In this document: positions 1-54,630 of the stretch, in pieces
Layout of the letters: every line of letters begins with the position of its first letter
Position numbering within the stretch: position 1 is the stretch's first letter
From: Octopus sinensis
Taxonomy: Eukaryota
Assembly (NCBI RefSeq): GCF_006345805.1
Contig: NW_021832227.1
Span: 248,001 to 312,000 of the forward strand
Direction: 5' to 3'
Length of the DNA stretch: 64,000 nt
Made by a program: the position numbers and the translations under genes
The notes under the pieces: generated by a model
What the model saw: the letters and a program-made list of their open reading frames with translations, nothing else
Database searches by the model: none
Told to the model about the DNA's origin: nothing

Positions 1-2866
1 CAGGTGGAATGTGAGCGGATAGTCAAGTGGAGGGGTGAATTGAACATTCCTCGACTGTCGGGGGACTATTTGTATTGCCTGGTAAACCAGTGTCTTGTTG
101 ACTGTTCGGTAAAGTGTATTTGATAACATAAATAGGAGTCAATATTGGTATATTCTGATTTGTGGAAGAGTAATATTGGTCGTGTGTGTGAAGTAGTGCT
201 GTCTATGGGAAGTTGGGGGAGAACACGTGTGGAGTGGGTGACCCAGTTTGTCCGGACTGTCAAGTCATTGTGGAATTATTTGGGAAAGTTACACGTATAT
301 TGAGGACTCTATTGAAGGAGTGCCACAACTCCCGGATTCGTCAAATTCTTACCACTGTCGATTCACTACACAGAACCAAACAGGCCCGAACTGAACAAAT
401 CGAGCAACTAAATAGGCAAAGAAATGTCATTGCCCAGAAGTGTGAGCAAGTAAAGTCTCGGCCAGCTGAAAAAAAGAACAAACCCCCAAAAATTAAACTT
501 ACCAACCAGCAACTCAACATGGTCAAATTACCCGATATTCAACTTGCCTCAGTCATTTGGTTGTACTCATTGTAGGCCACTCGTTTGTGCCAACTGGCAG
601 TTCAAATGTACAAGAACCTGAGTATTTATGACTTTGAAGAAATGAGGAGCTACTTCCGCCCTCCTCCGACAGTTGTTTCCATAGCCTCTTGCATTTGTCG
701 CATGTTCAAACAAAGGCCATGTTGGGAGGACGCGAAAAGACTGTTTTTGTCTAATCGATTTTTCGAAAAGATGGAATTCTACGACAAAGATGCAGTCGAC
801 ACTTCTCTCCTCACCCACCTCCGTAAATTCACTGAGAACCCACGTTTTGCTCCCGAAGCAGTGGGGAATGTAAGCAGAGCAGCAGTGTCCTTGTCCATGT
901 GGATTCATGGGGTGTATAGCTACGCCAGTTTTAAACACTCTTCGACTCCCAAAGACGTCTACAATTTCCACCCACAGTTTAGAGATCAACTATACAAGGA
1001 GGAATCACTCCAAGACGAGTTGGTGGACATACAACAACAACTCACCAAAATTTGCGAGCAGATTAAAGTAAGCCTCACTACTTTCTCCAGGAACAAGAAC
1101 TTAAACTGACACGACTTGCCAACTTGCTGACCAATCTTGATCTTTTTACTATTCAATGGAAGGCACAACTCGACAATAACAATTTTATTGGTGAGGACAT
1201 TTAACTGACTTGAGGCCACGTGCTGTACTGTGCGGCTATGTTCAGATGTTGTGGGGAGATGACAGAATCAGACCGACAGGTTTTCGAGAAAAAAATATTT
1301 GACATTCTCAACCAAATTTTTGAGTGGAATCTTGAAATGGATGAAACCCTCAAATACAACAACAGCCACTTGGACGCCTTGTTGAGTGGACATGTGCACA
1401 AGGAATATTGGCGACTGGACGAAATACTTTTCGACCGAGAGCAGCAATATCACATTCAATACAAGTTCAGGTCTCCACATGCAATACAAAATTATGCACT
1501 CTTCACTCTCGCCCACATCCTCAACGATCAAAGCGAGTGGGCCTTGTTTGTGGACCCCCAAAATAAGATCTCCGACTACATCGACGAGTCGGTCGTCTCT
1601 TTGAGAGATAGGAAAGATAGAGTTAGGGAGGCGATAAAGAATGGTAGTTTTATCCAACCACGTTCAAGGGAGCCGCCTTGTCGTTACTGACATTGATGGA
1701 GAATGCCCACATCTCATCACTAAAGACTTTGAATCCTCCCCTTATCCCACTGTCTTCATCGAGACAGACCCAATTGTCGTCCACCCTGACTTTAGTTTGG
1801 TCGTCACGTCCTTTGACCACCATGTGTCCACATCCTTGTCTCCTATTATCGACCTCCGGGACAGTCCCACTGAGCGTCTGGCAGCGTTGGATAGAGAACT
1901 GACGAAAAAAGTGGGCTTGGATGGTCAGGAAGAGACAATTGCACGCCGTCTGTTAGAACTTGGATTGGAGTCTCTACAAATATTTGTATTGGACTAGTCT
2001 TATGCGTAGAAAGAGGCCGAGTCGATCGTGGCAAACTTTAATGAGGACGAGGACTGTATGATTGAGCAACTCCTCGGACGTGCTCGACTGATTCAGGACG
2101 AGTATTCAATAGTGAGGTCCCGGAGGAAATACCTCGATGAGAAAAAGGAGCATTTAAATGAACTGACCTTCAGTCTAGCTGGAATATGGACTGACTGTCC
2201 TGATTTGTCTGTTCAAACATTGCTGAGAAATGTCATTGATGAGACCACACTTACAGACCTGAGGGACATTCTGATGTATTCCCCACTCCCTCCTTCCCTT
2301 CTCCCTCAACACACCACAACCTGGCCCCAGACAGTCCACAAGCTCATTACGCTTTATGGCACGAGCGGAATCATCACTCTTCAAGGTTTTACTGTCCCTT
2401 CTCATTTAGAACACATTCATAGTACTTTCGACGTCATAGCTCACATTCCTCTCCGATCTATGCCATGTGCTACTCCGGGGATGGAGATGGGCAGAAAATG
2501 GTTGAAATGGCCCAAAAAGCAAGCAGTGAGCCGTCCTTCTTGATTGTGTTCACGTCGGCCCAACACTGCACTCGAATCACTCGTTTAGCAAATGTTGCAT
2601 TTTTCTTTATTCCAAGGAATTTCGAGAAATACCAGTCATGTTTGTTCTCATTTTAGAATCCACTTTCCCTCTTCACTGTGATGTTCCCACTGTTCTGAAA
2701 GAACTCCCAATTGTATGCTTTAATAATATTCTAGAATGTCTCCCTCAGTCGTGTCCCTCCCACTAAATTATTCGGGGACCAATTAAAGGACCTTTGTTTA
2801 GCTATCAATTTCCTCCGTTCATTACCTGATAACGTAGAGGAAATGGAGGAGGATTTGTTTTACTAA
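1..2866 (+). CDS. Divergent dynein heavy chain-like protein (stalk/microtubule-binding domain and downstream region), 5' end outside the window, multi-exon
   Basis: EEMRSYFRPPPTVVSIASCICRMF..WEDAKRLF..FFEKMEFYDKD..PRFAPEAVGNVSRAAVSLSMWIHGVYSY matches the dynein stalk MTBD pattern. The ORF pieces join through 23-24 nt GT-AG introns (e.g. gtcatttggttgtactcattgtag, gtaagcctcactactttctccag, gtattggactagtcttatgcgtag). Stop TAA at 2864-2866. Exons near the 5' end and around 2520-2700 are not fully resolved. Confidence 0.65.
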
Positions 2867-5593: not shown

Positions 5594-7804
5594 TCAGAAT
5601 CCTCCAAGTTCTGCGTATGCTAAATCAATATTGGCGCTTATTTCTTTGTATATTCTTTTCTCGGACATGAGTTCTTCTATAAATATATTAGAGTGAAATA
5701 AAGATAATGTTGTTAAATGATCCAGGGAATGGTTAGACACCAATAATAATGGATATTAGTTAAATGGAATTTATGTCATTCATCGTCGATTGTATCAATT
5801 CTTCTAATTCCGCAGTTTTTTTAATCGCATTTTCCAGCTTACCTGAGCAAATATTGAGAAAAACAGACCTTCCGTAATTTCTAGATCTGATTCCAGTCTT
5901 TTGTTGCAATATAAATATTCTTCATTGGATTTGGTCGCCTATGTGAGTGTGTTAGCGGGGAATGTCAGTTAATAGGTAGCACAGCAACCTTCTAGTCTAT
6001 CGATGTCTTGCTGACGCTTATTGGACACCCTATCGAACTCTGCTGCCCTTGTCTCGCTCTTAAATTCCATTAAACTCGACAAATTATGCCGCATAGCAAA
6101 GCTGCACATTACCTCATACAAATCTTCTCTCAGTTTCTTGATTGTAGCCTCGTATTCTTCTTCCTTGTTATATGCCTACAATAAATATGTCAGTTTAATT
6201 AATTAAAGTTAGCAACACGGGCCTAGTGGAGATAAGAAAGGAAGGATTGTTAGCTCGGTACCTCAAGAGAGCTAATCTCAAGTGATTTGAGATTGTTTCC
6301 AACAACTTTTAGCTCATCTTCTAACTGGACAACCTTACTACAAAAAATATAAATAAAACTGCTCTTAATACACCGGGAACCGCAGCGACAGATTAAGACT
6401 AACCTCATTTGAGTGAGCTTCCAATGTTTTTATTCTGTATTGGACGTTCGAATGTTCGTTTGTAGCTATCGTCAGTTGTCTAAATCAGTTCCAATGAACT
6501 GACTTTTTATATTCATTTGCCTGTTCTTCAAATTTATCACAAGATAATTCCAAGTTTTTGTTTGTTCTTAAAACCTAATCGCCAGTATTAGCCGTATGCG
6601 CCACCACTGCTACACTTTGCCCACGCAGCGGTTCCCGGACTAAAATACCTCTCAGCCAATTCAAGACGAGCCATTGTCCTCTCCAAGTCTATTTCAGTGA
6701 CCATCAACTTCCTGCTGGTCTATTTATCAATTACGTGTTATTTTTACCTCGTCGTATTTATGGTCGCTGTCGTCTGCTGTCCATTTTATATCGGCCAATT
6801 GTTTTTCCAGTAGGTAAATTCGCTCTTCGTCGTTGTTGGACTTGGTTTCGAGGACTTTGCGGATTCTAAAACGCATTTATTGCGGGCAAAGTGTTAGCAG
6901 TGGTGGTTGAAAGGAAAATTTAGCTAACACTGTCTAATTCGTCCTTCATTGCTCCCTGTTCATTTTTAATTCTGTTCAATTCTTTTTCAAGTCATCATTA
7001 GCATCTTCCAAGGCCTCATTTTTATGTTCCAGCACTTTCCGTTGGCTTTAATTGTTAGTGGTAGTTAATAGGTCAGGTAAATACCGGTCACTTTCGTCGA
7101 ATTTTTCAATGTAATGATTAAGTTGCTGCGTCTTTTCTTTCAAGTTGGAATCTGTGGCTTCGTTATTATCGTCCTGCAGCTTCAAATGTCGGTTTAGAGA
7201 TTGTAGCTCGTTTTCTTTCTATAATTAATTATTTATGGCATATTATTGGAATAATTAAACACATAATTATTATATACACTCTCTAGTTCAGTTTGCAAGG
7301 ATTGATAATCCTTTTGGATTTTTATAAATTTATCCTCAAATTCATCTCTTTCATTTCTTAAAGTCTCGATTTTTGTTTTTAGGTTAGCTATTGGATTGTT
7401 TTGCATTCCACAAAAATTGCAATTTGTTAATATAATTTATTATATTTACAATCTATGTTATCCTCTCAGAAAATAATACTTAAAATTAAATTACTTAATA
7501 AATAATAATTAATTCAAAAAATGACCTCGCTTAATTCTTTTAATGCATCATTAAGCTGAGCTGAAACTTGATTATACTTCTCGTCAAGATTTTCGTTGTC
7601 AATATTGACAGCTTTCTCTCTTTTAAGAATATCTGAGATTTCATCTTCTTTCTAAAAAAACACACAAAGACTTACTTCTTTCAACGTATTTTTTAAATTT
7701 GTGACTTGTGATTCAAGTTCATCAGCTTTTTCTATGCAGTTCTCTTTTTCCATTTTAAGTTCCAAAATTTTTTTCTTCAATGCTCCAAGTGTTGCTTCTG
7801 CCAT
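5594..7804 (-). CDS. TPM: Tropomyosin with alternative first exons and five pairs of alternative exons
   Basis: Exons in transcript order: 1a 7804-7676, 2 7651-7526, 1b 7406-7278, 3 7218-7085, 4x 7045-6929, 4y 6865-6748, 5y 6719-6649, 5x 6574-6504, 6x 6479-6404, 6y 6337-6262, 7 6175-6113, 8y 6058-5989, 8x 5938-5869, 9x 5842-5760, 9y 5676-5594. All junctions are GT-AG. Exon lengths 126/134/118/71/76/63/70/83 nt equal the canonical tropomyosin sizes as recalled. Peptides GALKKKI, RKVLE, SRKLMVTEIDLER, EDELKVVGNNLKSLEIS, ETRA. Confidence 0.95.
6373..6387 (-). promoter_or_regulatory. Intronic RNA pairing site B2 (between exons 6x and 6y)
   Basis: Sense CGCUGCGGUUCCCGG pairs with B1 at 14 of 15 positions. 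Confidence 0.7.
6601..6638 (-). promoter_or_regulatory. Central intronic docking region holding adjacent sites B1 (6624-6638) and A2 (6601-6622), between exons 5y and 5x
   Basis: Sense CCGGGAACCGCUGCG-U-GGGCAAAGUGUAGCAGUGGUGG. B1 complements 6373-6387 and A2 complements 6884-6906. It is a GC-rich island in an otherwise AT-rich intron set. Confidence 0.75.
6884..6906 (-). promoter_or_regulatory. Intronic RNA pairing site A1 (between exons 4x and 4y)
   Basis: Sense CCACCACUGCUAACACUUUGCCC is the reverse complement of site A2 (6601-6622): 22 bp with one bulged A. The complementarity is direct; the function is inferred. Confidence 0.75.
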
Positions 7805-9679: not shown

Positions 9680-10137
9680 CTATTCTATCGCCTGTTGATA
9701 AACGATGTTTGTCGTCCGTCCTTCCTTGGCATATATGAATAAATTTTCTCTTCTGCCTACCCTCGAGCATCCCACATACAGCTGTCCATGTGAAAAGCAC
9801 TCACTCTCTAAAAATAACCCAACTACCTTTAATGACTGTCCCTGGGCCTTGTTTATTGTCATTGCAAAACTCATCCTCAAAGGAAATTGCAGCCTTTTAA
9901 ATCTAAATGGTAATTCATCAGAAATTATCGGAATTCGTGGAATATAAACATCCTCACCTTTATACTTACCTGTTAATATCGTGGCCTCTATTACGTTAGC
10001 CATCAAATTTTTGATAACTAACCTCGTTCCGTTGCATAATTTAGGTGGCGCAAGATTTCGTAATAAAACCACTGGAACGCCTATCTTTAACTTTAAAAGA
10101 TGATTCGGGATTCCAGAGGGATCTAGGGAGTTTAAAA
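9680..10137 (-). pseudogene. Helitron PIF1-type helicase C-terminal fragment
   Basis: [59 protein letters not shown]. The rest of the Rep-helicase is absent. Confidence 0.9.
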
Positions 10138-26289: not shown

Positions 26290-26740
26290 TGTAACCACTG
26301 TAAGAGTAAGGCAATGACCGTTGATCATTTAGCCACGAAGTGCGGGAGTATGCTTTACCATGATTACACATGGAGGCATCACGAGGTGGTGATGTCTTTC
26401 CATCTTTTGCTCTGCAATAAGTATGGCTTGAGGCGGTCCAGAAAGTTGCGAACCCATCGAGTTCAATCGGTGTGTGAGAACTCGCGGGTGTGCATTAAAG
26501 TGGATAACCCCATACGCACCTCGATTGTTGTCCAGCACAACAGACCCGATATTGTGGTCCACGATAAGGTCACCGGGGAGATTGTTATCGTGGAGGTGGG
26601 GATCACGTGCCTAGACCGTTTGCAGATAGTGGAAGTGGAGAAAAGGAGGAAGTATGACCTCCTTGCAAACGAGCTAGGACTGATGCACCAGTGCAAAGTC
26701 CATGTCATCCCGTGTGTGATGACAGGTCCACATTAATCAA
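26290..26740 (+). mobile_element. R4/NeSL-like non-LTR 3' fragment
   Basis: TVDHLATKC..DYTWRHHEV..HNRPDIVVHDK..IVIVEVGIT..EVEKRRKYDLLANEL. Confidence 0.8.
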
Positions 26741-26789
26741 TCCATGTTAAAAGAGGAGATTGGGTTTCTCAGAAATGTGGACACATAAG

Positions 26790-27360
26790 TTTTCCAATTC
26801 TTAAAGGTTACGAACGGCATTCCTGCCTTTTCAGTTCCGCACACACGCTCGCCTCTCAGCCGCAAACTAAGACTTACCGCCTTACCTGCAACCCAGACAT
26901 TATCTTCTCTAAGACCTCAGGGAGGCCTTTGAGGGACAATTCCTGGGTGTCCGAGAGCTCCTCTCGCCATTTTAAGCCATGGGCTAGCTGGATATCTCGT
27001 CTTCTGACTTTCTTGAGCGCGTCAACGTACTTCTTCCGGTCCTCGCAGAAGTGCCAGGCATGTACGCCATAGGTCAACACGGGTAACACCATGGCGTTAA
27101 ACACGCGTAGCCAAGCACCTCTCCGCAGCCGGAAGGCACGCAGCGCGCCTAATCGCTGAATTGCACGCATTTTCGTACATGCAATGTGATCATCAAACTT
27201 ACCGGACAGCTTAAAGAGCACGCCAAAATAAGTCATCCGATCAACTGCAGCAATTGCTGACCCGTTCAGCAATAACCTAGGGACGTAATTAGTGTAACCC
27301 CTCGTCCTTTTACAGACTTTGAGAACACTGCACTTGTCCGGACGCATCTTTAGACCCCTA
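26790..27360 (-). mobile_element. LINE reverse transcriptase C-terminal fragment
   Basis: PDKCSVL..MTYFGVLF..FDDHI..VFNAMVLPVLTYGVHAW. Confidence 0.7.
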
Positions 27361-27944
27361 CTCCCACACCAGTTTACAAGCCCCTACTCTCTCACTAGTT
27401 TACAAGTTACAAGTCCAGGTATTTATTGTTAATGCTGAATTCTAATGACGTGAATTATGATATTCGGGTAACTAATTAATAAAATCAAAAATCATCTTAA
27501 AACAGATTCGAATTTAAATTGTAGCTTTTTAAGCACTTATGATAGTTTGAGTAGAATAATCGAAGGATAAATGTTTAAGTTACTACATAAGTGTTTCCTA
27601 CGTATTAACAAAAAAAACTTAAAAAATAAGTACACAAAAGTAAGAATTCGTTGCATTACATATAAACAAAAAAGTGCATATATCATAATAAATTTTGTTC
27701 GATCAAGTTTAAAAAATCTCGATGCACTGTTTTACTTTAATCTGGCAGTAACGATTTAAACGTCATTGAAAGTAGACATAAAATCTAAAGGACTAGTTAC
27801 AAGATGTCCAGCAATAAAAAATATAGACCGCACCTGACATCATAACTGACAATTATGAGTAATCAAAGATAGATTACTCATAAAAAGTTTTTTTATTAAA
27901 AAAATTTTTTTAAAAATATATTTTTTTAATTATTTTTTTTAGAA

Positions 27945-28847
27945 TTGGAACGGGTCAGGACTCAAAATCCCCGAAGACACAACGAAACAAAGGAACTGGG
28001 ATAACATTGTCTGCTCCAAAATTTCAGAAGGGCTTAAAAAAAAGCAGAAGCAAATCAACATCGCCTTGCTTGCCTGGTGTCAGCCTCAAGTGGAGGGAGC
28101 GGAGCATGGCTTGGTGCAATCCCTTGCCCAAATCTCGGGACTTTTTTGGACGACGATTCTTTGAGGATTGGAATCGGACAAAGACTTGGACTAGACGTTT
28201 GCCAGGAGCACCGATGCCGCTGCGGGAAAACGGTCGATGCGAAGGGATTGCACCCGCTATCCTGCAGGAGATCCGCCGGAAGAGGACCACGTCACGCCGC
28301 TCTGAACGACGTGATCGTCAGAGCTCTGAAGGCTGCAGGCTTCCCAGCACAGCTTGCTTGAACCAGTGGGTCTCGATCGAGGTGATGGAAAGAGACCTGA
28401 CGGGATGACTCTTTTCCCTTTCAACTCCGGACGATCTTTGGTCTGGGACGCAACTTGCGTCGATACTTACTCAAGCACGAATCTCCTTAAATCGGTTCAG
28501 ACACCTGGAGCAGCTGCCTCAATCGCGGAAAACCTTAAAACCAAAAAATATTCCTTCCTCGGGGACCGCTACAGATTCACCCCTGTTGCGGCTGAGTCAT
28601 CAGGAGCTGTGGGCCCAGCGACTGCCGAGTTCTTGCGCAAACTCGGAAGAATGCTCGCCACAAAGAAAAATGATCCTCGTGAAGGAGTATGGCTAAGACA
28701 AAGGATCGGAATAGCCATACTCCGAGGGAACTCGCTTTCCATACAGGCAGCGGGCTTCCTCAATTGATTTCTCAAATCAATCTCTTCTCTGAATTTATTA
28801 ACTGACATTATTAATAATTTAGTAAAAAAAAAAAAAAAAAAAAAAAA
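27945..28847 (+). mobile_element. CRE-like non-LTR element, 5'-truncated, with poly(A) tail
   Basis: [84 protein letters not shown]; short 3' UTR and an A-run at about 28824-28847. One in-frame stop. Confidence 0.9.
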
Positions 28848-33589: not shown

Positions 33590-35330
33590 AAGTGATCAAA
33601 GGATGACACTTCAAGCACCTCCTTCCCAATACGTTAATCTGCGGGTTGTCCAGGCTGCTAAAGAGAGTGTTTGAAGGACTTTTAAGTTGATCTTTTTTAT
33701 TAGCGATTCCCTCTGAAGTTTGATCAACTCCTTCACATTAACTTGGGTAGCACCCAGACCATACTTAGCCGACACGTAGCCTTTTATGGTTCTAAGGTGT
33801 GTACCAAGCGCTTTTTTAACAGCAAGATTGGAAATCTCCCTTTGGAATACACATAACCCACTCCAGAAGGTGTCGTGCATCTTAGTAAGAATTAGCTCAC
33901 TCAAGTGTAAGATGTTACTCAGTCCACGTCTTAGCTGCACGTGAGACAAGTATAATCTCTCCTTATTGTTTGCCAACACTTGGACGTGATTCTGTCGGAG
34001 TACTCTTCTGACAATAAGGTCCATTTTATCGTACTCACTCAGCTTAAATTCGATCAGGCCAACAAAGTAGTTTAGAAGTGAGATCGCGTACTCGTTCAAG
34101 TTGGAGGATCTCTGAAGACTTAGCGAACAGTTTAATGTCGTTTATGAATATGAGATGGTTGGTGCTAAAACATCCTCCTTCATGTTCAATCGACATTTGT
34201 TCGAATTGGGCAGTGAGGATTCTACTCAGCGGTTCTAGGCAGAGAAAAAACAACAACGGAGACATGTTCTCGCCCTGTAATATGCCCCTTTCTTGCTTAA
34301 TCTCGCCTATATCGCATTTTTGTTGTGTAAATGCACAACCCACCTGTCTATCACAGTTACAATTTGGCCTTTGCAGACATTCAACGAGGTAGGCATTGTT
34401 AACCGAGTCATATGCCTTCTTACATCCACCCAAATCGACACTAGTGAGTTTCCGTGGACACTCGCGAGGCATTTGTTAACGAGTGCCTGCTTCTTAGCTT
34501 CCTGGAAATCTTTCCACAGAACTAACTGGTTCTCGGACAGAATCCCATTCATTTCCACAAAATTTCTGACTTCAGTAGCCACCATCTTAGTCATCAACTT
34601 GTACAGGTTGGGCATACAGGTAATCGAACGATAATCTGTAGGAACGCAAAGGTTATCTACTTTAGGAATCAAATAATTGATCCCAGTACATAACCACTCT
34701 GAAATCGAGCCAGTATTAGGTATAAACTGTTCGATTGCTTGACAAATGCAATCGTGGATTGGTTTGCAATTTTTTATAAAGAAATTATACATTTTATTGA
34801 CCCCAGGTGTCTTCCAGTCAAAAAGACGGGTTACTGCCTCATCAAACTTGTTGTGGATGTCAGAGACACCACAAGACTCGATCATCAAGGAGCATTGGAT
34901 CCACAAAACGGAAACGACACACTCTTGCGAGGACGTGTTTTTCACATACTCCCCCATTTGTCAAGCATTTCGGTCTTTTGCTGAATATCGTCTTTCTGTG
35001 CAACCGCCGATAGAACAGCCTGCGATTAAACTCAAACAGGTTGTTCTCTCACCTGCGCTGACACCGAGAGTCATGCGTAATAAACGACAATCAGCTCCTC
35101 CCTCTCTGCCCGGGCACACCTCAACTCGTTGAAGTCCTATTTGACAGCTCGTTCTCAACAAAGTACAGTAAGCCCCAAAGGAAGAGTCATGCCCTTGACC
35201 GCATTGCTCACATTGTGAATGTGCTCAGTCACCGCTTCCAGCTCGGTCTTTTTTGCGGCTACCTTCTCGGAAATGTTTAACTTCCACATACTCTTTGGCC
35301 TAGGTTTCTGGGTGATTTCTTCATAGGTTG
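33590..35330 (-). mobile_element. R4/NeSL-like non-LTR retrotransposon RT region, degraded
   Basis: DYRSITCMPNLYKLMTK, GILSENQL, KKAYDSV, GILQGENMSPLLFFLCLEPL, NHLIFINDIKLF (degenerate YxDD), RLYLS..RRGL. Confidence 0.85.
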
Positions 35331-35379
35331 TCTATGCCAAGTACAAATAGAGAAAAATCTTGTCCATTGTCTCTCGAGC

Positions 35380-35938
35380 CTTACGCACGATCGATGCAAC
35401 TCATAAAGTCACTCCTCTTGAGTCACTCTGCGATCCGCAAGGGAGACAATACAATTCGCGGAGATATGCCTACTAAATATCTCCTTGACATGCAGGAGTA
35501 TCGATAACCCGCTACTCTGGTGGTCGTGTTGTTCAGAACATGGGGGGCATACTTCGGCATATCCGCAAACCCAGTTCTTCCCCGCAAGCCAGGAGGAGAG
35601 GTCTTGGCTAGCTTCTTCAGTGCATTCAACGATTAAGATCAAGCTGGGCTGGGTGGCAAAATGCAAAATACTCTAAACTAAAAAGCTTCGAAACCTGATA
35701 GCCCACACAGGTACTTCCGTGTCCAGCTTGCACGACTTCGCTCGGGACATCATCCACTCTTTTTCGAAACACTCCGCACCCTCGCCCCTGAAGACCTTTT
35801 TTCCTGTCCTGGACCGCCTCACCAGTCGCCACCTATTGGGATTTGGGATCTCTGGGAGCGCCCGATCGCCGCTGTCCGCTACCTGATTGCAGCCGGCTTC
35901 CTACATGCTAGAGAAGCCGGGGTAACTAACTAACTAAG
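35380..35938 (+). mobile_element. LINE 3' end with (TAAC)n tail
   Basis: QLARLRSGHH..IWDLWERPIAAVRYLIAAGFLH followed by taactaactaactaa. Related to 45510-46930. Confidence 0.7.
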
Positions 35939-36514
35939 ATCAAGCTAAAGCGTAGATTGAAGCACTGAAGGAGGATAGGCTGCCCATTCCTAGGCATCCT
36001 GGAAGCTCTTCACAACACTTGGAAAGAAGGTATTTAACCCAGTCCTCGCGGGTCGTGCACTCAGTCCCTTCTGTAATGGAAAGAAAAAAGGTATGTCCAT
36101 CGGGGGTCTGCCTCTCCGGTGCGTTTGTCAATCCTGCTGTAGGTATATTACTAATAATATTTTTGTTATTCTGATTTCCAGGTGCAGCATATATCGACAT
36201 ATTAGCACGTTACAGATTATAATTTTTTTGTTAATAATAATAAAAAGTCGTATGTGAAAAAGTTGAAATCCTTTGAGGTTAACCAAACTGAATAAAGTAA
36301 GATAGAATTCACGTATCGGAATGCATCTTCTAATTTTATGTCTATATTTCAAAAAAAAATCTCCAATACAAATTATACATTCTCAGTCGTAAAGAAATCA
36401 CTACCAAAACAACAACATTCAAGTCGAGATAAAAATGAATAAATAAATATTACAAGGAAAATTCATTATTAATTAAATTTAAAAAATTAAACATTATTTG
36501 TTTCGATAGTAATA

Positions 36515-36932
36515 ATGTCAGGACAGGATTGTGATTGGAAATTTGAATATTTGATCAATGGGGAAAATCTAAATTCCAAAGCTCTTCATAACCCTCCAGA
36601 AAATATGGAAGAATTTTATAATGCTAGTGAAAATGCTATCGGAGCTCTTAACGAAAATCAGCAAATAGAACTCAATATACACAAAGTATTATTTGAAAAC
36701 TTATTATAGATAAAATTGCGTGCAGAGAATGAACGTTTTCTTCGGTCTAATCCAATATTTTACAGAATTCTCAGCGAGTTTTTAAAGTATTTCACTTTTG
36801 TCCGACTTTATTTATAGAAAATGTTTTTTAGATGAACCTGACGATATATTAGAATATTCAAAAAGTTTCAATTTAAAATTTAATTTTTTAGAATTTTTTA
36901 CTCATGAAAATTTAGAAAAATTCAAAAACTAA
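36515..36932 (+). CDS. RIIAD1: RIIa domain-containing protein 1 (ciliary), 4 exons
   Basis: Spliced GALNENQQIELNIHKIKLRAENERFLRSNP..ILSEFLKKCFLDEPDDILEYSKKFFT matches the RIIAD1 pattern (KI..R..NE.YLR..FF...FL..PD.ILEF...YFT). Short GT-AG introns. Confidence 0.75.
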
Positions 36933-36965
36933 TATTATAATTCACAGCTAAAATAATTTACATTA

Positions 36966-38400
36966 CTTTTTTTTTTTTTTTTTTTTTTGACAGAACTCGA
37001 ATCATTAATTAATAAATTCTCCCAGCGAGACGGAGGAACAGCTGTTGCCACGCATGACAGCCAGCAGGATCCTCTGAATGAGGAAGTAAATTCCCTAGGG
37101 TCCTTGGACCGCGAAGAACAAAGATTCCCAATTTCTTTAGGGAAGTGAGGGTCCCGGAGCCAAAGACGCCGGAAGTCTCGACAACGATTGGCCAAAACCA
37201 AAAGTCATCCATCAAAGACTGATATTCCGGCACTTCGTCGAAGCTCAGCCTTATTAGCACGAGACCCAGCAAGAGAGGCCGATTCGTTGATGAAAGACTT
37301 TGAGAAGGTATCCACACAAGTGGAATCCCAGACCAAAGGTCTCCCAGAATAAAACGAGAACAACGTAGAGCCGTCCGGCCTTTTCCCGTCACCACGGTCG
37401 AGACCCTTAGGCTCAAGGACAGAAGGGTAGCCGGCCTTTTCGAGTGAGTCGAGAATGATTCTGTTAATCGCCGAATGGCGTGGAATACGAACCCGCGCTT
37501 TTCTTGCAGGAGAGGGCATGGAGCCCGTATACGTCCATAGTAGATCCGCACCGGCAGGGGTGGGGACTACAGATCGGAAGTCCGAGGCGGAGGCAAATGC
37601 CAAAACGGAGGGCGTCGGAGTCAAGACAGGTGTCCAATGGGTCGAAGGAAGGCAGTTAAGCCAAGAGCCAGAATGCGGTTGGCGGCTGGCACGGTAACAA
37701 GCCAGTCTGTGCTGGTTCAGGAGAGCCTCCAACGAGTCCGCATGATGCTTACTAAGAATTTTATCCCATTCACGTTGGAGGGACCTATCAGAAGGGAACT
37801 CAAGCCCTTTTTCCTTCCAAAGCAAAAGTGCAGAATTAATATCAGGGTCCAAACGAGATCCGGGCGATTTTTCAAGAATCTTATGGACAAGAAGATACAA
37901 TCCTGAAGACGATGAAAGGAAAGCGGGAAGAGAAATGTCGAGAGCCGAGCGGAGCCCAAGCCCACCAAAAGGAACAGGAAGTTTGGCCTGACGCCAACCG
38001 ACATCATCGAACTTGACGTTAAAAATAATCTCGGCTGAAGAACGCACCAGAGCGTCAAAAGACTCCAAAGCAGAGGGAACAGAAAAGCAACAGGAACTCC
38101 TTAGGACATAATTGATCCTCGGAATCAAAAGAAAGTTTTTGAGGATAAAAAAAGCGGGATGGGGATCGATGTCCACAAGTTTATCACAAAGAGAAGCAAG
38201 AGCATTTCTCTTGGAATCGAGAATACGAGAGACCGATTGGTGGTGGATCGGGGCACCCAGGATTTCAAGTTCAGAATAAGAGGTCTGCCTCAGATCGGGC
38301 AAGAGGCCACGAAACTGGGCAAGATCCCATTTTATAAAAGATTTAAAAATATCCAAATATACACATGGATTCAAAAACCAAAATGACTTGGAGAAACAAA
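36966..38400 (-). mobile_element. CRE-like non-LTR element, 5'-truncated, with poly(A) tail
   Basis: 389-aa ORF: LEILGAPI, LLIPRINYVLRSS, QAKLPVPFGGLGLRSA, HSGSWLNCLP, RHSAINRII, LEPKGLDRGDGKRPDG, LVWDSTCVD. T-run (poly A on minus) at 36966-36989; frameshifts. Confidence 0.92.
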
Positions 38401-47369: not shown

Positions 47370-48220
47370 ATTAGCAGCAGAGGCTAAAATGGAATGGCAA
47401 TTCCCATACAAGATGGCTATTGATATGCGTTGGAAAAATTTTTTAGTTCTGGGACCGAGGACTCCCGACGTTTCCACTGCGATCGGGGCAAAGATATAAG
47501 GGTACGATAATGCACTGTATTTTTTGACTTTTAGCGTTTCTGCCAGGTTAGGTGTGGAGACCGACTCTTCGGCTTACGTAAAGATGTTTCCGGTGGAGAA
47601 GGTGTCCGCACAAGTTGCGTTTCAGATGAAAGACTTGCCATTTTCAAAAGGGAAAGTTGTTAGACCATCAGGATGTTTACCATCCTCTCGAACCAGGTCG
47701 TCCGGTTTCAATTGTGATAAGAATCCGGCAATTTCGAGAGTCCGCTTGACTATGTCATTCAGGACAGTATGTCGAGGGAGGCTTCCGGAGCTTCTCTGGC
47801 ACGATAATGGGTGCAATCCAAAGGGGTCATCGGTCGGTCCGCAGCGGAACCGGTGTTCCCGACATACGTTCAGCCCTAGACGCAATGAGACGCCGATCCT
47901 CAAGCAATTATTGTCCAATAAGGTTCCAATCGATCTCATTGGGATGGCGGTCAACCAAGTCCTCCGAATATAGTTGCAAGGCAGCCAATAAACAAGCCAA
48001 GTGATATTGATTAAGCTTAGGATATAGGTTGTTCGACTTCTGGTCACAGAGGATCCTGTCCCATTCGTCCTGTGCGTGTGTATTCTGCGGAAGCTCAAAA
48101 GACAACCCAAGCCAGCAACTTTCTACGGCGACTGACTCCGAGTCCATAGAAGATTCGGTAACGGGTTGGAGAATTTCTTGGACAAAGGTGCTCGTAGCAT
48201 GTGTAAAAGAAAGGAATGCT
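47370..48220 (-). mobile_element. CRE-like 3' fragment
   Basis: [50 protein letters not shown]. Confidence 0.85.
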
Positions 48221-52273: not shown

Positions 52274-53360
52274 ACCAGAGGCCCTCTCGGATCCTTAAGT
52301 CTTCTCCCGATGGACTGCCCGACCTCGTTGAGGAACGAGTTAGTCTCCTTTCCCGCGGCTCCAGGGAGATTGGCATAATACGGTAACGGTCCGCGAGGGA
52401 AGAATACTTTTGTAGTTTCATCCTTTCGGCGTGGTTTGCAGCCGAACAAGAGTTCGCAGCGGAAGAATCGATCCTCGACTTTGAGAAGGTATCAACAACG
52501 GTAACATCCCATACGAGGGCTTTCCCGGACGATTACGGAAATATTGTCATCCCATCAAGCCTTTTCCCGTCTCCCCAATCGAGTCCGACCGATTCGAGAA
52601 GGCACGAATGGCCCGCGGATTCAAGACCGGCCTTCACGATTTGATTGAGGGTCTTGTGTCTGTATTCCATGCCTGCGCTCCTCTTGCAGGAGAGTAGGTG
52701 CAGTCTCTTTTCGTCAACGGCCTTACCGCATCTGCAGCGGTGTTTTGCGCAAACGTCCAGGCCGAGTCGGTGTGCGACTCCAATGCGCATGACAGTATCG
52801 TCTAGCCACGTCCCGATACTGAAGAGAGGAAGAGCATTCAGCCAGCTGCCAGAGTGAGGGGCGGATGCCGCACGAAGGCATGCCAGGCGGTGTTGGTCAA
52901 GGGTTACCGATAGCTCAGACACACGCGCTCGGCATGCGATAGTGTCCAAGGCACGTTGGGAGGAGAAATCTCCAGGCCTCTCAGAAAAGAAGCGATCCCA
53001 GGTAGCAAGCCCATCCGACAAAGCACCGTCCAGGCAAGATTCGAAAGGTTTGAGTAGGATCTCTGAGGCCAGGTTGTTGCACATCGAAAGGGAGGATAGA
53101 TATGCCAGGAGTGCCAAAGCATCGAGGTGGACGTAGGGGACGGATTCAGCAGCTTTTTTCAGAATGGCGTCGTATGCAAGGAGTAGATCCATTTGCAAGA
53201 AACAGGGATTGCTTCTGAGAATGAAGATAAGTTTCGGCAGATGGATGTTGTTTCTCAGGAGGAAAAAGGCAGTGTGTAAGTCCAGGATAGATAGGTTGGT
53301 TGAAACTCTTTGAAAGTATTCGGTTTTGGCAGCTGAGGCGGGTCGCAGAGGATTGGACAA
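52274..53360 (-). mobile_element. CRE-like fragment lacking both ends
   Basis: LPKLIFILRSNP, HSGSWLNALP, MRIGVAHRLGL..CRCG..HLLSC, GDGKRLDGMTIFP; in-frame stop. Confidence 0.85.
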
Positions 53361-53399
53361 AAAACTGTTAAAATATTCTCCAAAATCTGATCAATTAAT

Positions 53400-53600
53400 T
53401 TGTATTAATCCTTTCGTGCGTGTCCATTTCGCCGGGCGAGAGGCTGGCGCGATCTATAAAGGGTTAGAGCGTACTATCGCAGGGGATATCCGATCAAAAA
53501 ACCATCTCGAAGGAAACACAGTGATCCTGTCCGGTCTCTTCCCATCCCCCAATCGATCCAAGTGGGTTCAAATATGGAGAAGATTCCGGCGACATCAAAA
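53400..53600 (-). mobile_element. Small internally deleted CRE-like remnant
   Basis: GDGKRPDRITVFP joined almost directly to RISPAIVRSN. Confidence 0.5.
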
Positions 53601-53759: not shown

Positions 53760-54045
53760 TGTGACAGGTAAGAGGCGGAACCACGCCGGAGGCGGAACCT
53801 GGAGGAGGAATTTTTAATAAACAATAATTTTTTGATTTAATTTTCATTGGAAAATCATTTAGGGTTAGGGTTAGAGTTAGGGTTAGTTTTTCACTTGGGG
53901 AAAAAGTGAAATAAATTTGAACAAAAAATGTATATTTGAGTGTTTTAATAAATATTTTAGTGTACAATTTTAATTTTAAAAACAATTTGAAAAATTCCGC
54001 CTCCAGGTTCCGCCTCCGGCGTGGTTCCGTCTCTTACCTGTGACA
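53760..54045. mobile_element. MITE (~286 bp) with ~56-bp GC-rich TIRs and internal telomere-type repeats
   Basis: TGTGACAGGTAAGAGGCGGAACCACGCCGGAGGCGGAACCTGGAGG.. at the left and its reverse complement at the right (3 mismatches). Flanking direct repeat AGGAT (5 bp if the ends are TGT..ACA; AAGGATT, 7 bp, if the ends are one base shorter). Confidence 0.85.
53859..53886 (+). repeat. Interstitial (TTAGGG)n-type repeat, about 4.7 units
   Basis: ttaggg ttaggg ttagag ttaggg ttag. Confidence 0.85.
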
Positions 54046-54269
54046 AGGATTATACTATACTGGACCGATGGGTGCACAGACGGACTTATTGTCACCAGTT
54101 GAGCGTGATAGCAGGCTGAGAACGATCGCGCAAAATCGATTGCCGTAACACCGATAGTTAACAGCAAGCGACTGAGAAGGTTAATTACGAGTCGTTAAGT
54201 ATCCAAACCCAATAAACCTTAATTTCTGTCTTTTGGACAGAAAAGCAATCGAGTCGATTCGTCTAAGCT

Positions 54270-54630
54270 ACTTTTAAATAATTAAATCCGGGAAGCAGCT
54301 TGTTTGGGACGTCACATGTGCCGACTCTTTCGCCAAGGGAGCCTTGAATTCCACTGCTTGTCGACCCGGTTCGTCGGCCGAGAAGACCAAATCTACGAAA
54401 CTGACGAAATAAGAGGATTTGCGCAATCGATTTTGCTTTTGGCCAATTGCCGTTGAGACTTCCTGTGTTTTGGGGTCAAGACGCTTGCTCATTCAAAAAA
54501 ACTTGGCCGTCTGTGCACCCATCGCTCCAGAGATCCCAGGGAATTTATATTCCTTATTCAGAGGATATCGTTGGCTGTTTTACGCGGGAATTGTCTCTCA
54601 ATCCTGCGAGCCGGTACTTAATAGCTAGAT
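54270..54630 (+). mobile_element. CRE-like 3' fragment
   Basis: FKSGKQLVWDVTCADSF..RFCFWPIAVETS; frameshifted. Confidence 0.75.

What the first reader, a model, noticed from the sequence alone, without database searches (positions are those of the whole stretch)
5594..7804. One 2.2-kb gene interleaves two nearly independent tropomyosins
Seen: exon order 1a-2-1b-3-4x-4y-5y-5x-6x-6y-7-8y-8x-9x-9y. Pairs match in length and phase (118, 71, 76, 70 and 83 nt; 4x is one base short, see separate finding). The y path gives 289 aa of conserved muscle-type sequence. The x path from exon 1b gives 247 aa of highly divergent sequence. Only exons 3 and 7 are shared. Introns within a path are minimal (24-28 nt), while introns between paths are 50-86 nt. 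The alternating x-y-y-x-x-y layout is not simple tandem duplication of single exons. Inference: heavy alternative splicing and its regulatory intron sequence were kept despite genome-wide intron shrinkage. Pairing 1a-2 with y and 1b with x is inferred from length and divergence.
Basis: partly seen in the sequence, partly recalled or inferred. Interest (0 to 1): 0.7.

Follow-up and report, generated by a model that had tools for sequence, protein, structure and literature searches.

The report
Compact tropomyosin gene with splice-switch helices
A 2.2-kb tropomyosin gene from an animal with tiny introns (probably a dicyemid parasite) carries paired alternative exons, as tropomyosin genes usually do, and its enlarged introns hold two strong RNA helices that probably switch three exon pairs together.

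Summary
On the minus strand (7804-5594) lies one tropomyosin gene with exons 1a-2-1b-3-4x-4y-5y-5x-6x-6y-7-8y-8x-9x-9y. All have AG/GT borders, and the pairs match in length and phase. The y path gives a 289-aa tropomyosin closest to spiralian ones. The x path from 1b gives a very divergent 247-aa tropomyosin, broken by one missing base in exon 4x.

Duplicated exons assigned to two promoter-specific isoforms is the known "internal paralogy" of tropomyosin genes, and molluscs also have alternative exons 4, 5, 6, 8 and 9. The order 4-4-5-5-6-6 is what single-exon tandem duplication produces, so the claim that this is not simple tandem duplication is not supported.

New here: the long introns contain two GC-rich long-range helices. 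Stem A (24 bp) loops out exactly 4y+5y. Stem B (15 nt) loops out exactly 5x+6x. Their inner arms abut in intron 5y/5x, so the helices cross. This resembles the bidirectional RNA-pairing model of Drosophila srp, but here it would couple three exon clusters into one binary choice.

No transcripts or related species could be found, so expression, conservation and splicing effect remain untested.

The parts
5594..7804 (-). Whole tropomyosin gene, from the ATG of exon 1a to the stop of exon 9y
7676..7804 (-). Exon 1a (129 nt, starts at ATG), followed by a 24-nt intron
   Evidence: best ungapped matches are N-termini of spiralian tropomyosins
7526..7651 (-). Exon 2 (126 nt)
7278..7406 (-). Exon 1b (129 nt), an alternative first exon with its own ATG and no usable acceptor AG upstream. 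The AT-rich 119-nt region 7407-7525 is the presumed internal promoter.
   Evidence: the X path aligns end to end with 248-aa human Tpm3
7085..7218 (-). Exon 3 (134 nt), shared
6929..7045 (-). Exon 4x (117 nt, one base short). Frame is lost at the A5 run 6987-6983, with an in-frame TGA at 6978-6976.
   Evidence: 13/39 residues identical to 4y
6882..6906 (-). Stem A, upstream arm A1 in intron 4x/4y (CCACCACUGCUAACACUUUGCCCGC). It covers the best branch-point-like motif (UGCUAAC) for the 4y acceptor and starts 22 nt after the 4x donor.
6748..6865 (-). Exon 4y (118 nt), conserved type
   Evidence: 26/40 identical to Octopus exon 4
6649..6719 (-). Exon 5y (71 nt), joined to 4y by a 28-nt intron
6624..6638 (-). 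Stem B, upstream arm B1 in intron 5y/5x (CCGGGAACCGCUGCG), 10 nt after the 5y donor. It overlaps A2 by 3 nt.
6601..6626 (-). Stem A, downstream arm A2 in intron 5y/5x (GCGUGGGCAAAGUGUAGCAGUGGUGG), ending 26 nt before the 5x acceptor
6504..6574 (-). Exon 5x (71 nt), divergent
6404..6479 (-). Exon 6x (76 nt), divergent, joined to 5x by a 24-nt intron
6373..6387 (-). Stem B, downstream arm B2 in intron 6x/6y (CGCUGCGGUUCCCGG), 35 nt before the 6y acceptor
6262..6337 (-). Exon 6y (76 nt), the most conserved tropomyosin segment (ELKVVGNNLKSLE)
6113..6175 (-). Exon 7 (63 nt), shared
5989..6058 (-). Exon 8y (70 nt)
5869..5938 (-). Exon 8x (70 nt), divergent, with no tropomyosin-specific signal on its own
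5760..5842 (-). Exon 9x (83 nt with stop), joined to 8x by a 26-nt intron. It resembles the alternative (non-canonical) exon 9 of molluscs.
5594..5676 (-). Exon 9y (83 nt with stop), ending ...AELGGF like the protostome ...AELAGY/F terminus

Best explanation
This is a single tropomyosin gene that keeps the canonical bilaterian intron positions. It has two first-exon options: 1a+2, or 1b from an internal promoter. It also has tandem pairs of exons 4, 5, 6, 8 and 9. In each pair one copy (y) is conserved spiralian-type sequence and the other (x) is a strongly diverged coiled coil. The pairs are ordered x-y | y-x | x-y ... y-x | x-y. As a result the old constitutive introns, now 24-28 nt, always join same-type exons, so 4y+5y, 5x+6x and 8x+9x behave as two-exon cassettes. 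Two long-range RNA helices sit in the enlarged introns. Stem A (24 bp with one bulged A) closes a 255-nt loop holding exactly 4y+5y and covers the best branch-point motif of 4y. Stem B (15 nt with one U-U mismatch) closes a 236-nt loop holding exactly 5x+6x. Their inner arms abut in the 74-nt intron 5y/5x, so the two helices cross like a pseudoknot and should act as alternatives. I infer that stem A bridges the 4x donor to the 5x acceptor, giving 4x-5x-6x. I infer that stem B bridges the 5y donor to the 6y acceptor, giving 4y-5y-6y. This would be bidirectional RNA pairing that turns three mutually exclusive exon clusters into one binary switch. A plausible trigger is the choice at exon 4. If exon 3 is spliced to 4y, arm A1 is occupied and then removed, which leaves the hub free for stem B. 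If exon 3 is spliced to 4x, stem A masks 4y. Shown here: the exon anatomy, the homology, and the helices with their statistical excess. Inferred: that x exons are expressed, that the helices form in vivo and steer splicing, and any link to promoter choice or to the exon 8/9 module.
For: Exon anatomy, lengths, phases and splice sites come. The y path scores 181 bits against Pfam Tropomyosin and the x path 78 bits end to end; both exceed the 38.6-bit cut-off. The y path aligns without gaps to 284-aa vertebrate tropomyosin. The x path aligns end to end with 248-aa human Tpm3. The x exons jointly add 32 bits of position-specific signal beyond heptad-preserving shuffles (0/40 shuffles reach native). 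They keep the heptad register and stay open with P about 9e-6 by chance. Stem A: dG about -47, z -10.5, 0/100 shuffles. It is far beyond the best helix in 15 whole-gene shuffles (mean -25.9, minimum -28.9). Its pair probability is about 1.0 in the exon 3-7 ensemble. It is the strongest local helix in the 64-kb window apart from a repeat at 53.7-54.5 kb. Stem B: dG about -31.6, z -4.0, 0/100 shuffles. The arms are unique in the window and have 60-80% GC in a gene whose other introns have 15-46% GC. Both helices are slightly stronger on the transcribed strand. A precedent with the same crossing topology is the srp bidirectional pairing model (PMC6071210).
Against: Only one sequence is available, so there is no conservation or covariation test and no transcript evidence. 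Exon 4x is frameshifted as assembled. Stem A dominates thermodynamically, which would favour the divergent and apparently broken x path unless kinetics or proteins intervene. No significant helices explain skipping of 4x alone, of 6y alone or of 8y, or the 8x+9x cassette. On a window-wide ranking stem B is not exceptional: about ten loci on the same strand reach -30, mostly in GC-rich retroelement regions. Exons 6x and 8x have no significant tropomyosin-specific signal on their own.
Confidence: 0.55

Rival explanations
1. The x exons are decaying relics of ancestral alternative exons. Only the y (and perhaps 1b-y) mRNA is made, and the x path is unproductive.
For: 4x has a frameshift and an in-frame stop. 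Exons 5x, 6x and 8x have little or no specific similarity to any tropomyosin exon. The whole-library search with the x path found only 10 weak hits, best E about 1e-7. No transcript evidence exists.
Against: Four of the five x exons are fully open, all keep exact length and AG/GT borders, and 4x is open on both sides of a single 1-nt shift. Chance openness is about 9e-6. The heptad register is kept. The x exons jointly add 32 bits of position-specific signal. 9x specifically resembles molluscan alternative exon 9. A 24-bp helix that loops out the essential y exons 4y+5y makes no sense if x is never used. Only 1 of 16 exonic homopolymer runs is out of frame, so either a recent lesion or an assembly error is possible.
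Confidence: 0.17
2. The clusters are chosen largely independently, giving combinatorial isoforms as in molluscs and C. elegans, rather than as two coordinated paths. The x/y 'paths' are a labelling artefact.
For: Predicted molluscan isoforms mix types. P0013 combines canonical exon 4 with alternative 5. P0026 combines 1b, alternative 4 and 5, and canonical 6-9. P0018 combines canonical 4-7 with alternative 8 and 9. C. elegans lev-11 combines promoters and several clusters (PMC4165533). No helix links the 4-6 module to the 8-9 module or to the promoters.
Against: Within the 4-6 module the 24-28-nt introns join same-type exons, and the two significant helices bracket exactly the two-exon blocks 4y+5y and 5x+6x, not single exons.
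Confidence: 0.2
3. The complementary boxes do not regulate splicing. They could be remnants of an inverted duplication or mobile element, or chance matches in locally GC-rich intron sequence.
For: GC-rich local helices of -30 to -36 occur elsewhere in the window in repeat regions. Conservation cannot be shown.
Against: The arms occur nowhere else in the 64 kb. Composition-preserving shuffles never reach either helix. All four arms lie in introns between alternative exons, 10-35 nt from the splice sites they would bridge. The enclosed loops hold exactly two exons each.
Confidence: 0.08

Closest known systems
Bilaterian tropomyosin genes with 'internal paralogy' (vertebrate TPM1-4, C. elegans lev-11, molluscan tropomyosin genes)
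   Same: Two promoters (1a-2 versus 1b). Tandem duplicated exons of identical length and phase used as alternatives. Exon sizes of 126/134/118/71/76/63/70/83 nt are as in vertebrate TPM genes (own knowledge). The y path aligns without gaps to 1c1g. The 118-nt exon also occurs in lev-11. Exon copies are assigned to the two promoter isoforms (PMC3342872). Molluscs have alternative exons 4, 5, 6, 8 and 9.
   Different: Five of the seven exons downstream of the promoter-specific first exons are duplicated in just 2.2 kb, with 24-28-nt constitutive introns. The x copies are far more divergent than usual alternative exons. The probable source animal is reported to lack muscle cells (PMC6543705). The compact annelid Dimorphilus instead duplicated exons 3 and 4 and fused exons 5-9.
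Bidirectional RNA-pairing control of mutually exclusive exons (Drosophila srp exon 4; also RIC-3, MRP1 and some Dscam clusters)
   Same: Two pairs of complementary intronic elements each surround an alternative unit. The structures are not strictly exclusive, but simultaneous formation needs a pseudoknot. Looping one unit out favours the other (PMC6071210).
   Different: Here each loop holds two exons from two adjacent clusters (4y+5y; 5x+6x). One pair of crossing helices would therefore coordinate three clusters. The inner arms abut, overlapping by 3 nt, in one 74-nt intron. No conservation or experimental evidence is available yet.
Docking-site/selector competing structures (Dscam exon 6, 14-3-3 zeta, human ATE1)
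   Same: Long-range intronic base pairing brings a donor close to a distant acceptor and excludes the intervening alternative exons (PMC6071210; PMC7797038 abstract).
   Different: No set of selectors competes for one identical docking sequence. There are two different box pairs sharing a hub.
Classical tropomyosin exclusivity mechanisms (rat alpha-TM exons 2/3 branch-point proximity; chicken beta-TM exon 6B stem-loop)
   Same: This is the same gene family. RNA structure or branch-point placement decides between duplicated exons (Smith and Nadal-Ginard 1989, listed in PMC4165533; the beta-TM stem is own knowledge). Stem A covers the likely 4y branch point.
   Different: Those are local effects on one exon pair. 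Here the helices span about 250 nt and enclose two exons.

Membership tests
Tropomyosin (Pfam PF00261) | Profile match above the curated cut-off over the whole length | tested here: met
   y path 181.3 bits and x path 78.3 bits against a 38.6-bit cut-off; the x path matches profile positions 3-241 of 242
Tropomyosin (Pfam PF00261) | Unbroken heptad coiled coil of canonical length (about 284 or 248 aa) without indels | tested here: met
   y residues 7-283 align without gaps to 1c1g 2-278. x residues 6-245 align to Tpm3 7-246. Core heptad positions are hydrophobic in both x and y exons.
Tropomyosin (Pfam PF00261) | Each x exon is individually homologous to the tropomyosin segment at its position | tested here: inconclusive
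   Loss on heptad-preserving shuffling: 4x 11.6 bits (1/40 shuffles reach native), 5x 8.6 (0/40), 9x 6.0 (0/40), 6x 5.5 (5/40), 8x 2.6 (13/40); jointly 32 bits (0/40)
Mutually exclusive exons from tandem exon duplication | Adjacent exons of the same length and phase with their own splice sites | tested here: met
   117/118, 71/71, 76/76, 70/70 and 83/83 nt, all with AG...GT
Mutually exclusive exons from tandem exon duplication | Sequence similarity between the two copies | tested here: inconclusive
   Identity is 13/39 for exon 4 but only 2/23, 7/26, 3/23 and 3/27 for exons 5, 6, 8 and 9. 9x and 9y each match a different molluscan exon-9 type, which suggests an old duplication.
Mutually exclusive exons from tandem exon duplication | Exactly one copy per pair in mature mRNA | not testable with these tools
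   No transcripts or close relatives in any searchable collection. Double inclusion would shift the frame for exons 4, 5, 6 and 8 (lengths).
RNA-pairing-controlled mutually exclusive splicing (bidirectional model) | Complementary intronic boxes flanking the alternative units, stronger than chance | tested here: met
   Stem A z -10.5 and stem B z -4.0, each 0/100 shuffles; whole-gene shuffles; window-wide scan
RNA-pairing-controlled mutually exclusive splicing (bidirectional model) | The two pairings cross or compete so that only one forms readily | tested here: met
   The order is A1 < B1 < A2 < B2, with B1 and A2 overlapping by 3 nt. In a nested ensemble stem A has probability about 1 and stem B 0.
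RNA-pairing-controlled mutually exclusive splicing (bidirectional model) | Evolutionary conservation with compensatory changes | not testable with these tools
   No orthologous locus from a related species could be retrieved
RNA-pairing-controlled mutually exclusive splicing (bidirectional model) | Disruption and restoration of pairing changes exon choice | not testable with these tools
   Requires an experiment

The most novel reading that the evidence does not exclude
Two crossing intronic helices act as a relay. They pass the splice choice made at exon 4 on to exons 5 and 6, so three mutually exclusive exon clusters behave as one all-or-none switch between a conserved and a highly diverged tropomyosin. 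This would be selectively retained in an animal whose other introns have shrunk to about 25 nt, and it would be the smallest natural system known for coordinated multi-cluster exon choice.
Probability: 0.35. Interest if true: 0.7.

Novelty: new variant of a known kind. Interest (0 to 1): 0.55.

Why it matters
How distant alternative-splicing choices within one pre-mRNA are coordinated is largely unsolved, and known RNA-pairing systems each act within one exon cluster. Here a 2.2-kb gene offers a simple, mutable model in which two helices could couple three clusters. It also gives a concrete reason why a few introns escaped extreme shrinkage in a genome with 24-28-nt introns. If the source is a dicyemid, it further shows that an animal reported to lack muscle cells keeps both a canonical long tropomyosin and a separate, fast-evolving short one.

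Tried and rejected
1. Same-species or close-relative proteins and transcripts were sought with the y path and the x path. I also ran a full HMMER scan of 1.84 billion representatives with the x path and two exact-pattern scans of metagenome contigs. Nothing was closer than about 47% identity.
2. The AU-rich inverted repeat between the 8y acceptor region (6076-6061) and the end of 9x (5773-5758) (I5) is at noise level: z -0.2, 41/100 shuffles.
3. Helices that would loop out 4x alone, 6y alone, 8y alone or 8x+9x are not significant.
4. A third partner of the hub in intron 7/8y (-25) lies within the shuffle range.
5. The first whole-intron duplexfold runs allowed huge interior loops and inflated the null. 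They were replaced by 28-nt windowed scans.
6. One shuffle job timed out.
7. Rfam found no known RNA family in the window.
8. The local hairpin of the hub intron is not better than shuffles.
9. Rescue of the 4x frameshift by alternative splice sites was checked by eye. None restores the frame, because the TGA lies inside the exon.
10. Irimia et al. 2010 (PMC2912468) is not held in the library, so it is cited through PMC3342872.
11. Organism identity was inferred, not shown. Introns under 30 nt in animals are reported only for myxobolid myxozoans and dicyemids (PMC13644364). The best relatives of the y path are spiralian. Window GC of about 35% is close to the 36.7% of Dicyema japonicum (PMC6736024).
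Full report
WHAT IS THERE. The feature lies on the minus strand. Reading 7804 down to 5594 gives fifteen exon-like segments in the order 1a, 2, 1b, 3, 4x, 4y, 5y, 5x, 6x, 6y, 7, 8y, 8x, 9x, 9y. Every internal segment is flanked by AG and GT. The sizes are 129, 126, 129, 134, 117/118, 71/71, 76/76, 63, 70/70 and 83/83 nt. Exon 1b starts with ATG and has no usable acceptor upstream, so it is an alternative first exon behind a 119-nt AT-rich region. The spacings are 24, 119, 59, 39, 63, 28, 74, 24, 66, 86, 54, 50, 26 and 83 nt.

Joining 1a-2-3-4y-5y-6y-7-8y-9y gives 289 aa. Joining 1b-3-4x-5x-6x-7-8x-9x gives 247 aa only if one base is added at the A5 run 6987-6983. As assembled, 4x is 117 nt with an in-frame TGA at 6978-6976. 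Only introns joining two path-specific exons are minimal (24, 28, 24 and 26 nt). The y-path introns beside shared exon 7 are 86 and 54 nt.

IS IT TROPOMYOSIN, AND ARE THE x EXONS REAL? The y path scores 181 bits against Pfam Tropomyosin. It aligns without a gap to vertebrate alpha-tropomyosin, residues 7-283 on 2-278 of 1c1g. Its best relatives are spiralian tropomyosins (annelid, flatworm, nemertean, mollusc) at 40-47% identity. Each y exon finds its best ungapped match at the canonical position.

The x path scores 78 bits end to end and aligns over its full length with 248-aa human Tpm3. A full scan of 1.84 billion representatives found only ten weak relatives, the best two being 252-aa short tropomyosins at E about 1e-7. 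To separate homology from generic coiled-coil character, I shuffled residues within each exon among the same heptad positions. The five x exons together lose 32 bits (0/40 shuffles reach native). Exons 4x, 5x and 9x contribute individually, while 6x and 8x do not.

The x exons keep hydrophobic residues at the same two heptad positions as the shared and y exons: 0.90 and 0.50, against 0.25 or less elsewhere. Given their composition, 138 codons without a stop has probability about 9e-6. Exon 9x is closer to the alternative exon 9 of molluscs (scores 35-43) than to the canonical one (score 1). Exon 9y is the canonical ...AELAGY/F type. So the x exons are coding, or were until very recently. The single frameshift is either a recent lesion or an assembly error. 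Only 1 of 16 exonic homopolymer runs is out of frame.

HOW UNUSUAL IS THE LAYOUT? It is not unusual in kind. Tropomyosin genes of most bilaterians have independently duplicated exons. [quoted passage not shown] C. elegans lev-11 combines two promoters with several exon clusters, including 118-nt exons (PMC4165533).

The proteins retrieved here show molluscan alternative exons 4, 5, 6, 8 and 9 plus 1b (P0036, P0026, P0018). A read-through gene call (P0001) contains three exon-4 copies and two exon-6 copies. The compact annelid Dimorphilus took another route, with duplicated exons 3 and 4 and fused exons 5-9.

The order 4-4-5-5-6-6 ... 8-8-9-9 is exactly what single-exon tandem duplications yield. 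What alternates is which copy became x, and agreement across the three constitutive boundaries has a chance of about 1/8. The alternation does have a consequence, however. The shrunken constitutive introns always join same-type exons, which makes 4y+5y, 5x+6x and 8x+9x two-exon cassettes.

THE NEW OBSERVATION. The enlarged introns contain GC-rich boxes that are complementary to each other.

- Stem A pairs 6906-6882 (intron 4x/4y) with 6626-6601 (intron 5y/5x). It has 24 bp including one G-U, plus one bulged A that lies inside the UGCUAAC branch-point-like motif upstream of 4y.
- Stem B pairs 6638-6624 (intron 5y/5x, 10 nt after the 5y donor) with 6387-6373 (intron 6x/6y). It spans 15 nt with one U-U mismatch and has a possible extension toward the donor.
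- The loop of stem A (255 nt) holds exactly 4y, the 28-nt intron and 5y. The loop of stem B (236 nt) holds exactly 5x, the 24-nt intron and 6x.
- With a stem formed, the 4x donor and 5x acceptor are 22+26 nt from the helix, and the 5y donor and 6y acceptor are 10+35 nt from it.

Statistics for the helices:

- In 28-nt windowed duplex scans, stem A reaches -47.5 kcal/mol (z -10.5) and stem B -31.6 (z -4.0). Neither was reached by any of 100 dinucleotide shuffles of the two introns.
- The best helix anywhere in 15 segment-wise shuffles of the whole gene averaged -25.9, with a minimum of -28.9.
- Across the whole 64 kb, stem A is the strongest local helix except for a repeat at 53.7-54.5 kb. Stem B ranks about tenth, and the others lie mostly in GC-rich retroelement regions.
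- The arms occur nowhere else in the window.
- The arms are 60-80% GC, while the other introns of the gene are 15-46% GC.
- Both helices are slightly stronger on the transcribed strand.
- No other pair of flanking introns, and nothing in the exon 8/9 region, exceeds chance.

MECHANISM. This part is inferred. The arms are ordered A1, B1, A2, B2, with B1 and A2 overlapping by 3 nt, so the helices cross. In a nested ensemble stem A has probability about 1 and stem B 0. This is the topology of the bidirectional RNA-pairing model described for Drosophila srp. In that model two pairs of intronic elements surround the two alternatives and simultaneous formation is impeded by a pseudoknot (PMC6071210).

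The difference here is that each loop encloses two exons from adjacent clusters. Stem A would bridge 4x to 5x and hide the 4y branch point, and 6x then follows across the 24-nt intron. Stem B would bridge 5y to 6y, with 4y joined to 5y across the 28-nt intron. Because A1 lies in the intron that is removed when exon 3 is spliced to 4y, the choice at exon 4 could decide which helix forms and so be passed on to exons 5 and 6.

Open problems remain:
- Stem A is much the stronger helix, yet it favours the divergent and apparently broken path.
- Nothing found here explains skipping of 4x or of 6y, or the 8/9 choice.
- No link to promoter use can be seen.

SOURCE ORGANISM. It was not given and is only inferred. 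Introns shorter than 30 nt in animals are reported only for myxobolid myxozoans and dicyemids (PMC13644364). The y protein is spiralian-like. The window has about 35% GC and many retroelement ORFs, compared with 36.7% GC and 49% repeats in Dicyema japonicum (PMC6736024). Dicyemids are reported to lack muscle cells while keeping troponin genes (PMC6543705), so 'muscle-type' is only a sequence label. The held literature has no paper on a dicyemid tropomyosin gene structure.

VERDICT. The two-isoform reading and the retention of regulatory intron sequence are supported. The non-tandem origin is not. The promoter pairing is untested. As a gene architecture this is a new member of a well-known kind. 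The pair of crossing helices that enclose two-exon blocks is a new variant of RNA-pairing control of mutually exclusive splicing, resting so far on one sequence and on statistics only.

Noticed in passing
window 53764-54529: Nested GC-rich inverted repeats: 30 bp perfect (53776-53805 / 54000-54029) and 18 bp perfect (54066-54083 / 54507-54524). These are the strongest local helices in the window and are probably part of a foldback or transposon-like repeat.
   Followed up: no
window 7652-7675 (intron 1a/2, minus strand): The 24-nt intron GUAAGUCUUUGUGUGUUUUUUUAG has no adenosine between the 5' splice site and the terminal AG. A conventional branch-point A is therefore absent.
   Followed up: no
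window 6866-6928 (intron 4x/4y, minus strand): The weak 4x donor GUUAGC is complementary to the GCUAAC branch-point motif of the same intron. The local hairpin has z -2.98, reached by 1/200 shuffles. It could hide the 4x donor when stem A is not formed.
   Followed up: partly
window 6748-6865 (exon 4y): 4y is most similar to cephalopod exon 4: 25-26 of 39-40 residues identical, sharing LLEKQL...KW, against 19-23 for other spiralians. Cephalopods are the hosts of dicyemids. Overall identity to Octopus is no higher than to other spiralians, so this is probably coincidence.
   Followed up: partly
L001 5107-5119 and 5303-5315 (Dimorphilus gyrociliatus tropomyosin gene): A perfect 13-bp complementarity joins the intron between the two exon-4 copies to the 3' end of the second copy. 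In this gene exons 3 and 4 are duplicated and exons 5-9 are fused.
   Followed up: no
window 9680-10072, 26300-28800, 33600-38400, 47500-48100, 52500-53400: ORFs that look by eye like a helicase fragment (Pif1/Helitron-like) and several retroelement (reverse-transcriptase-type) genes, some in higher-GC stretches. None was searched against any database. This would fit a repeat-rich compact genome.
   Followed up: no
window 585-2543 (+ strand): Several long ORFs in a row look by eye like large exons of a conserved gene, possibly the dynein heavy-chain C-terminal region. No search was run.
   Followed up: no
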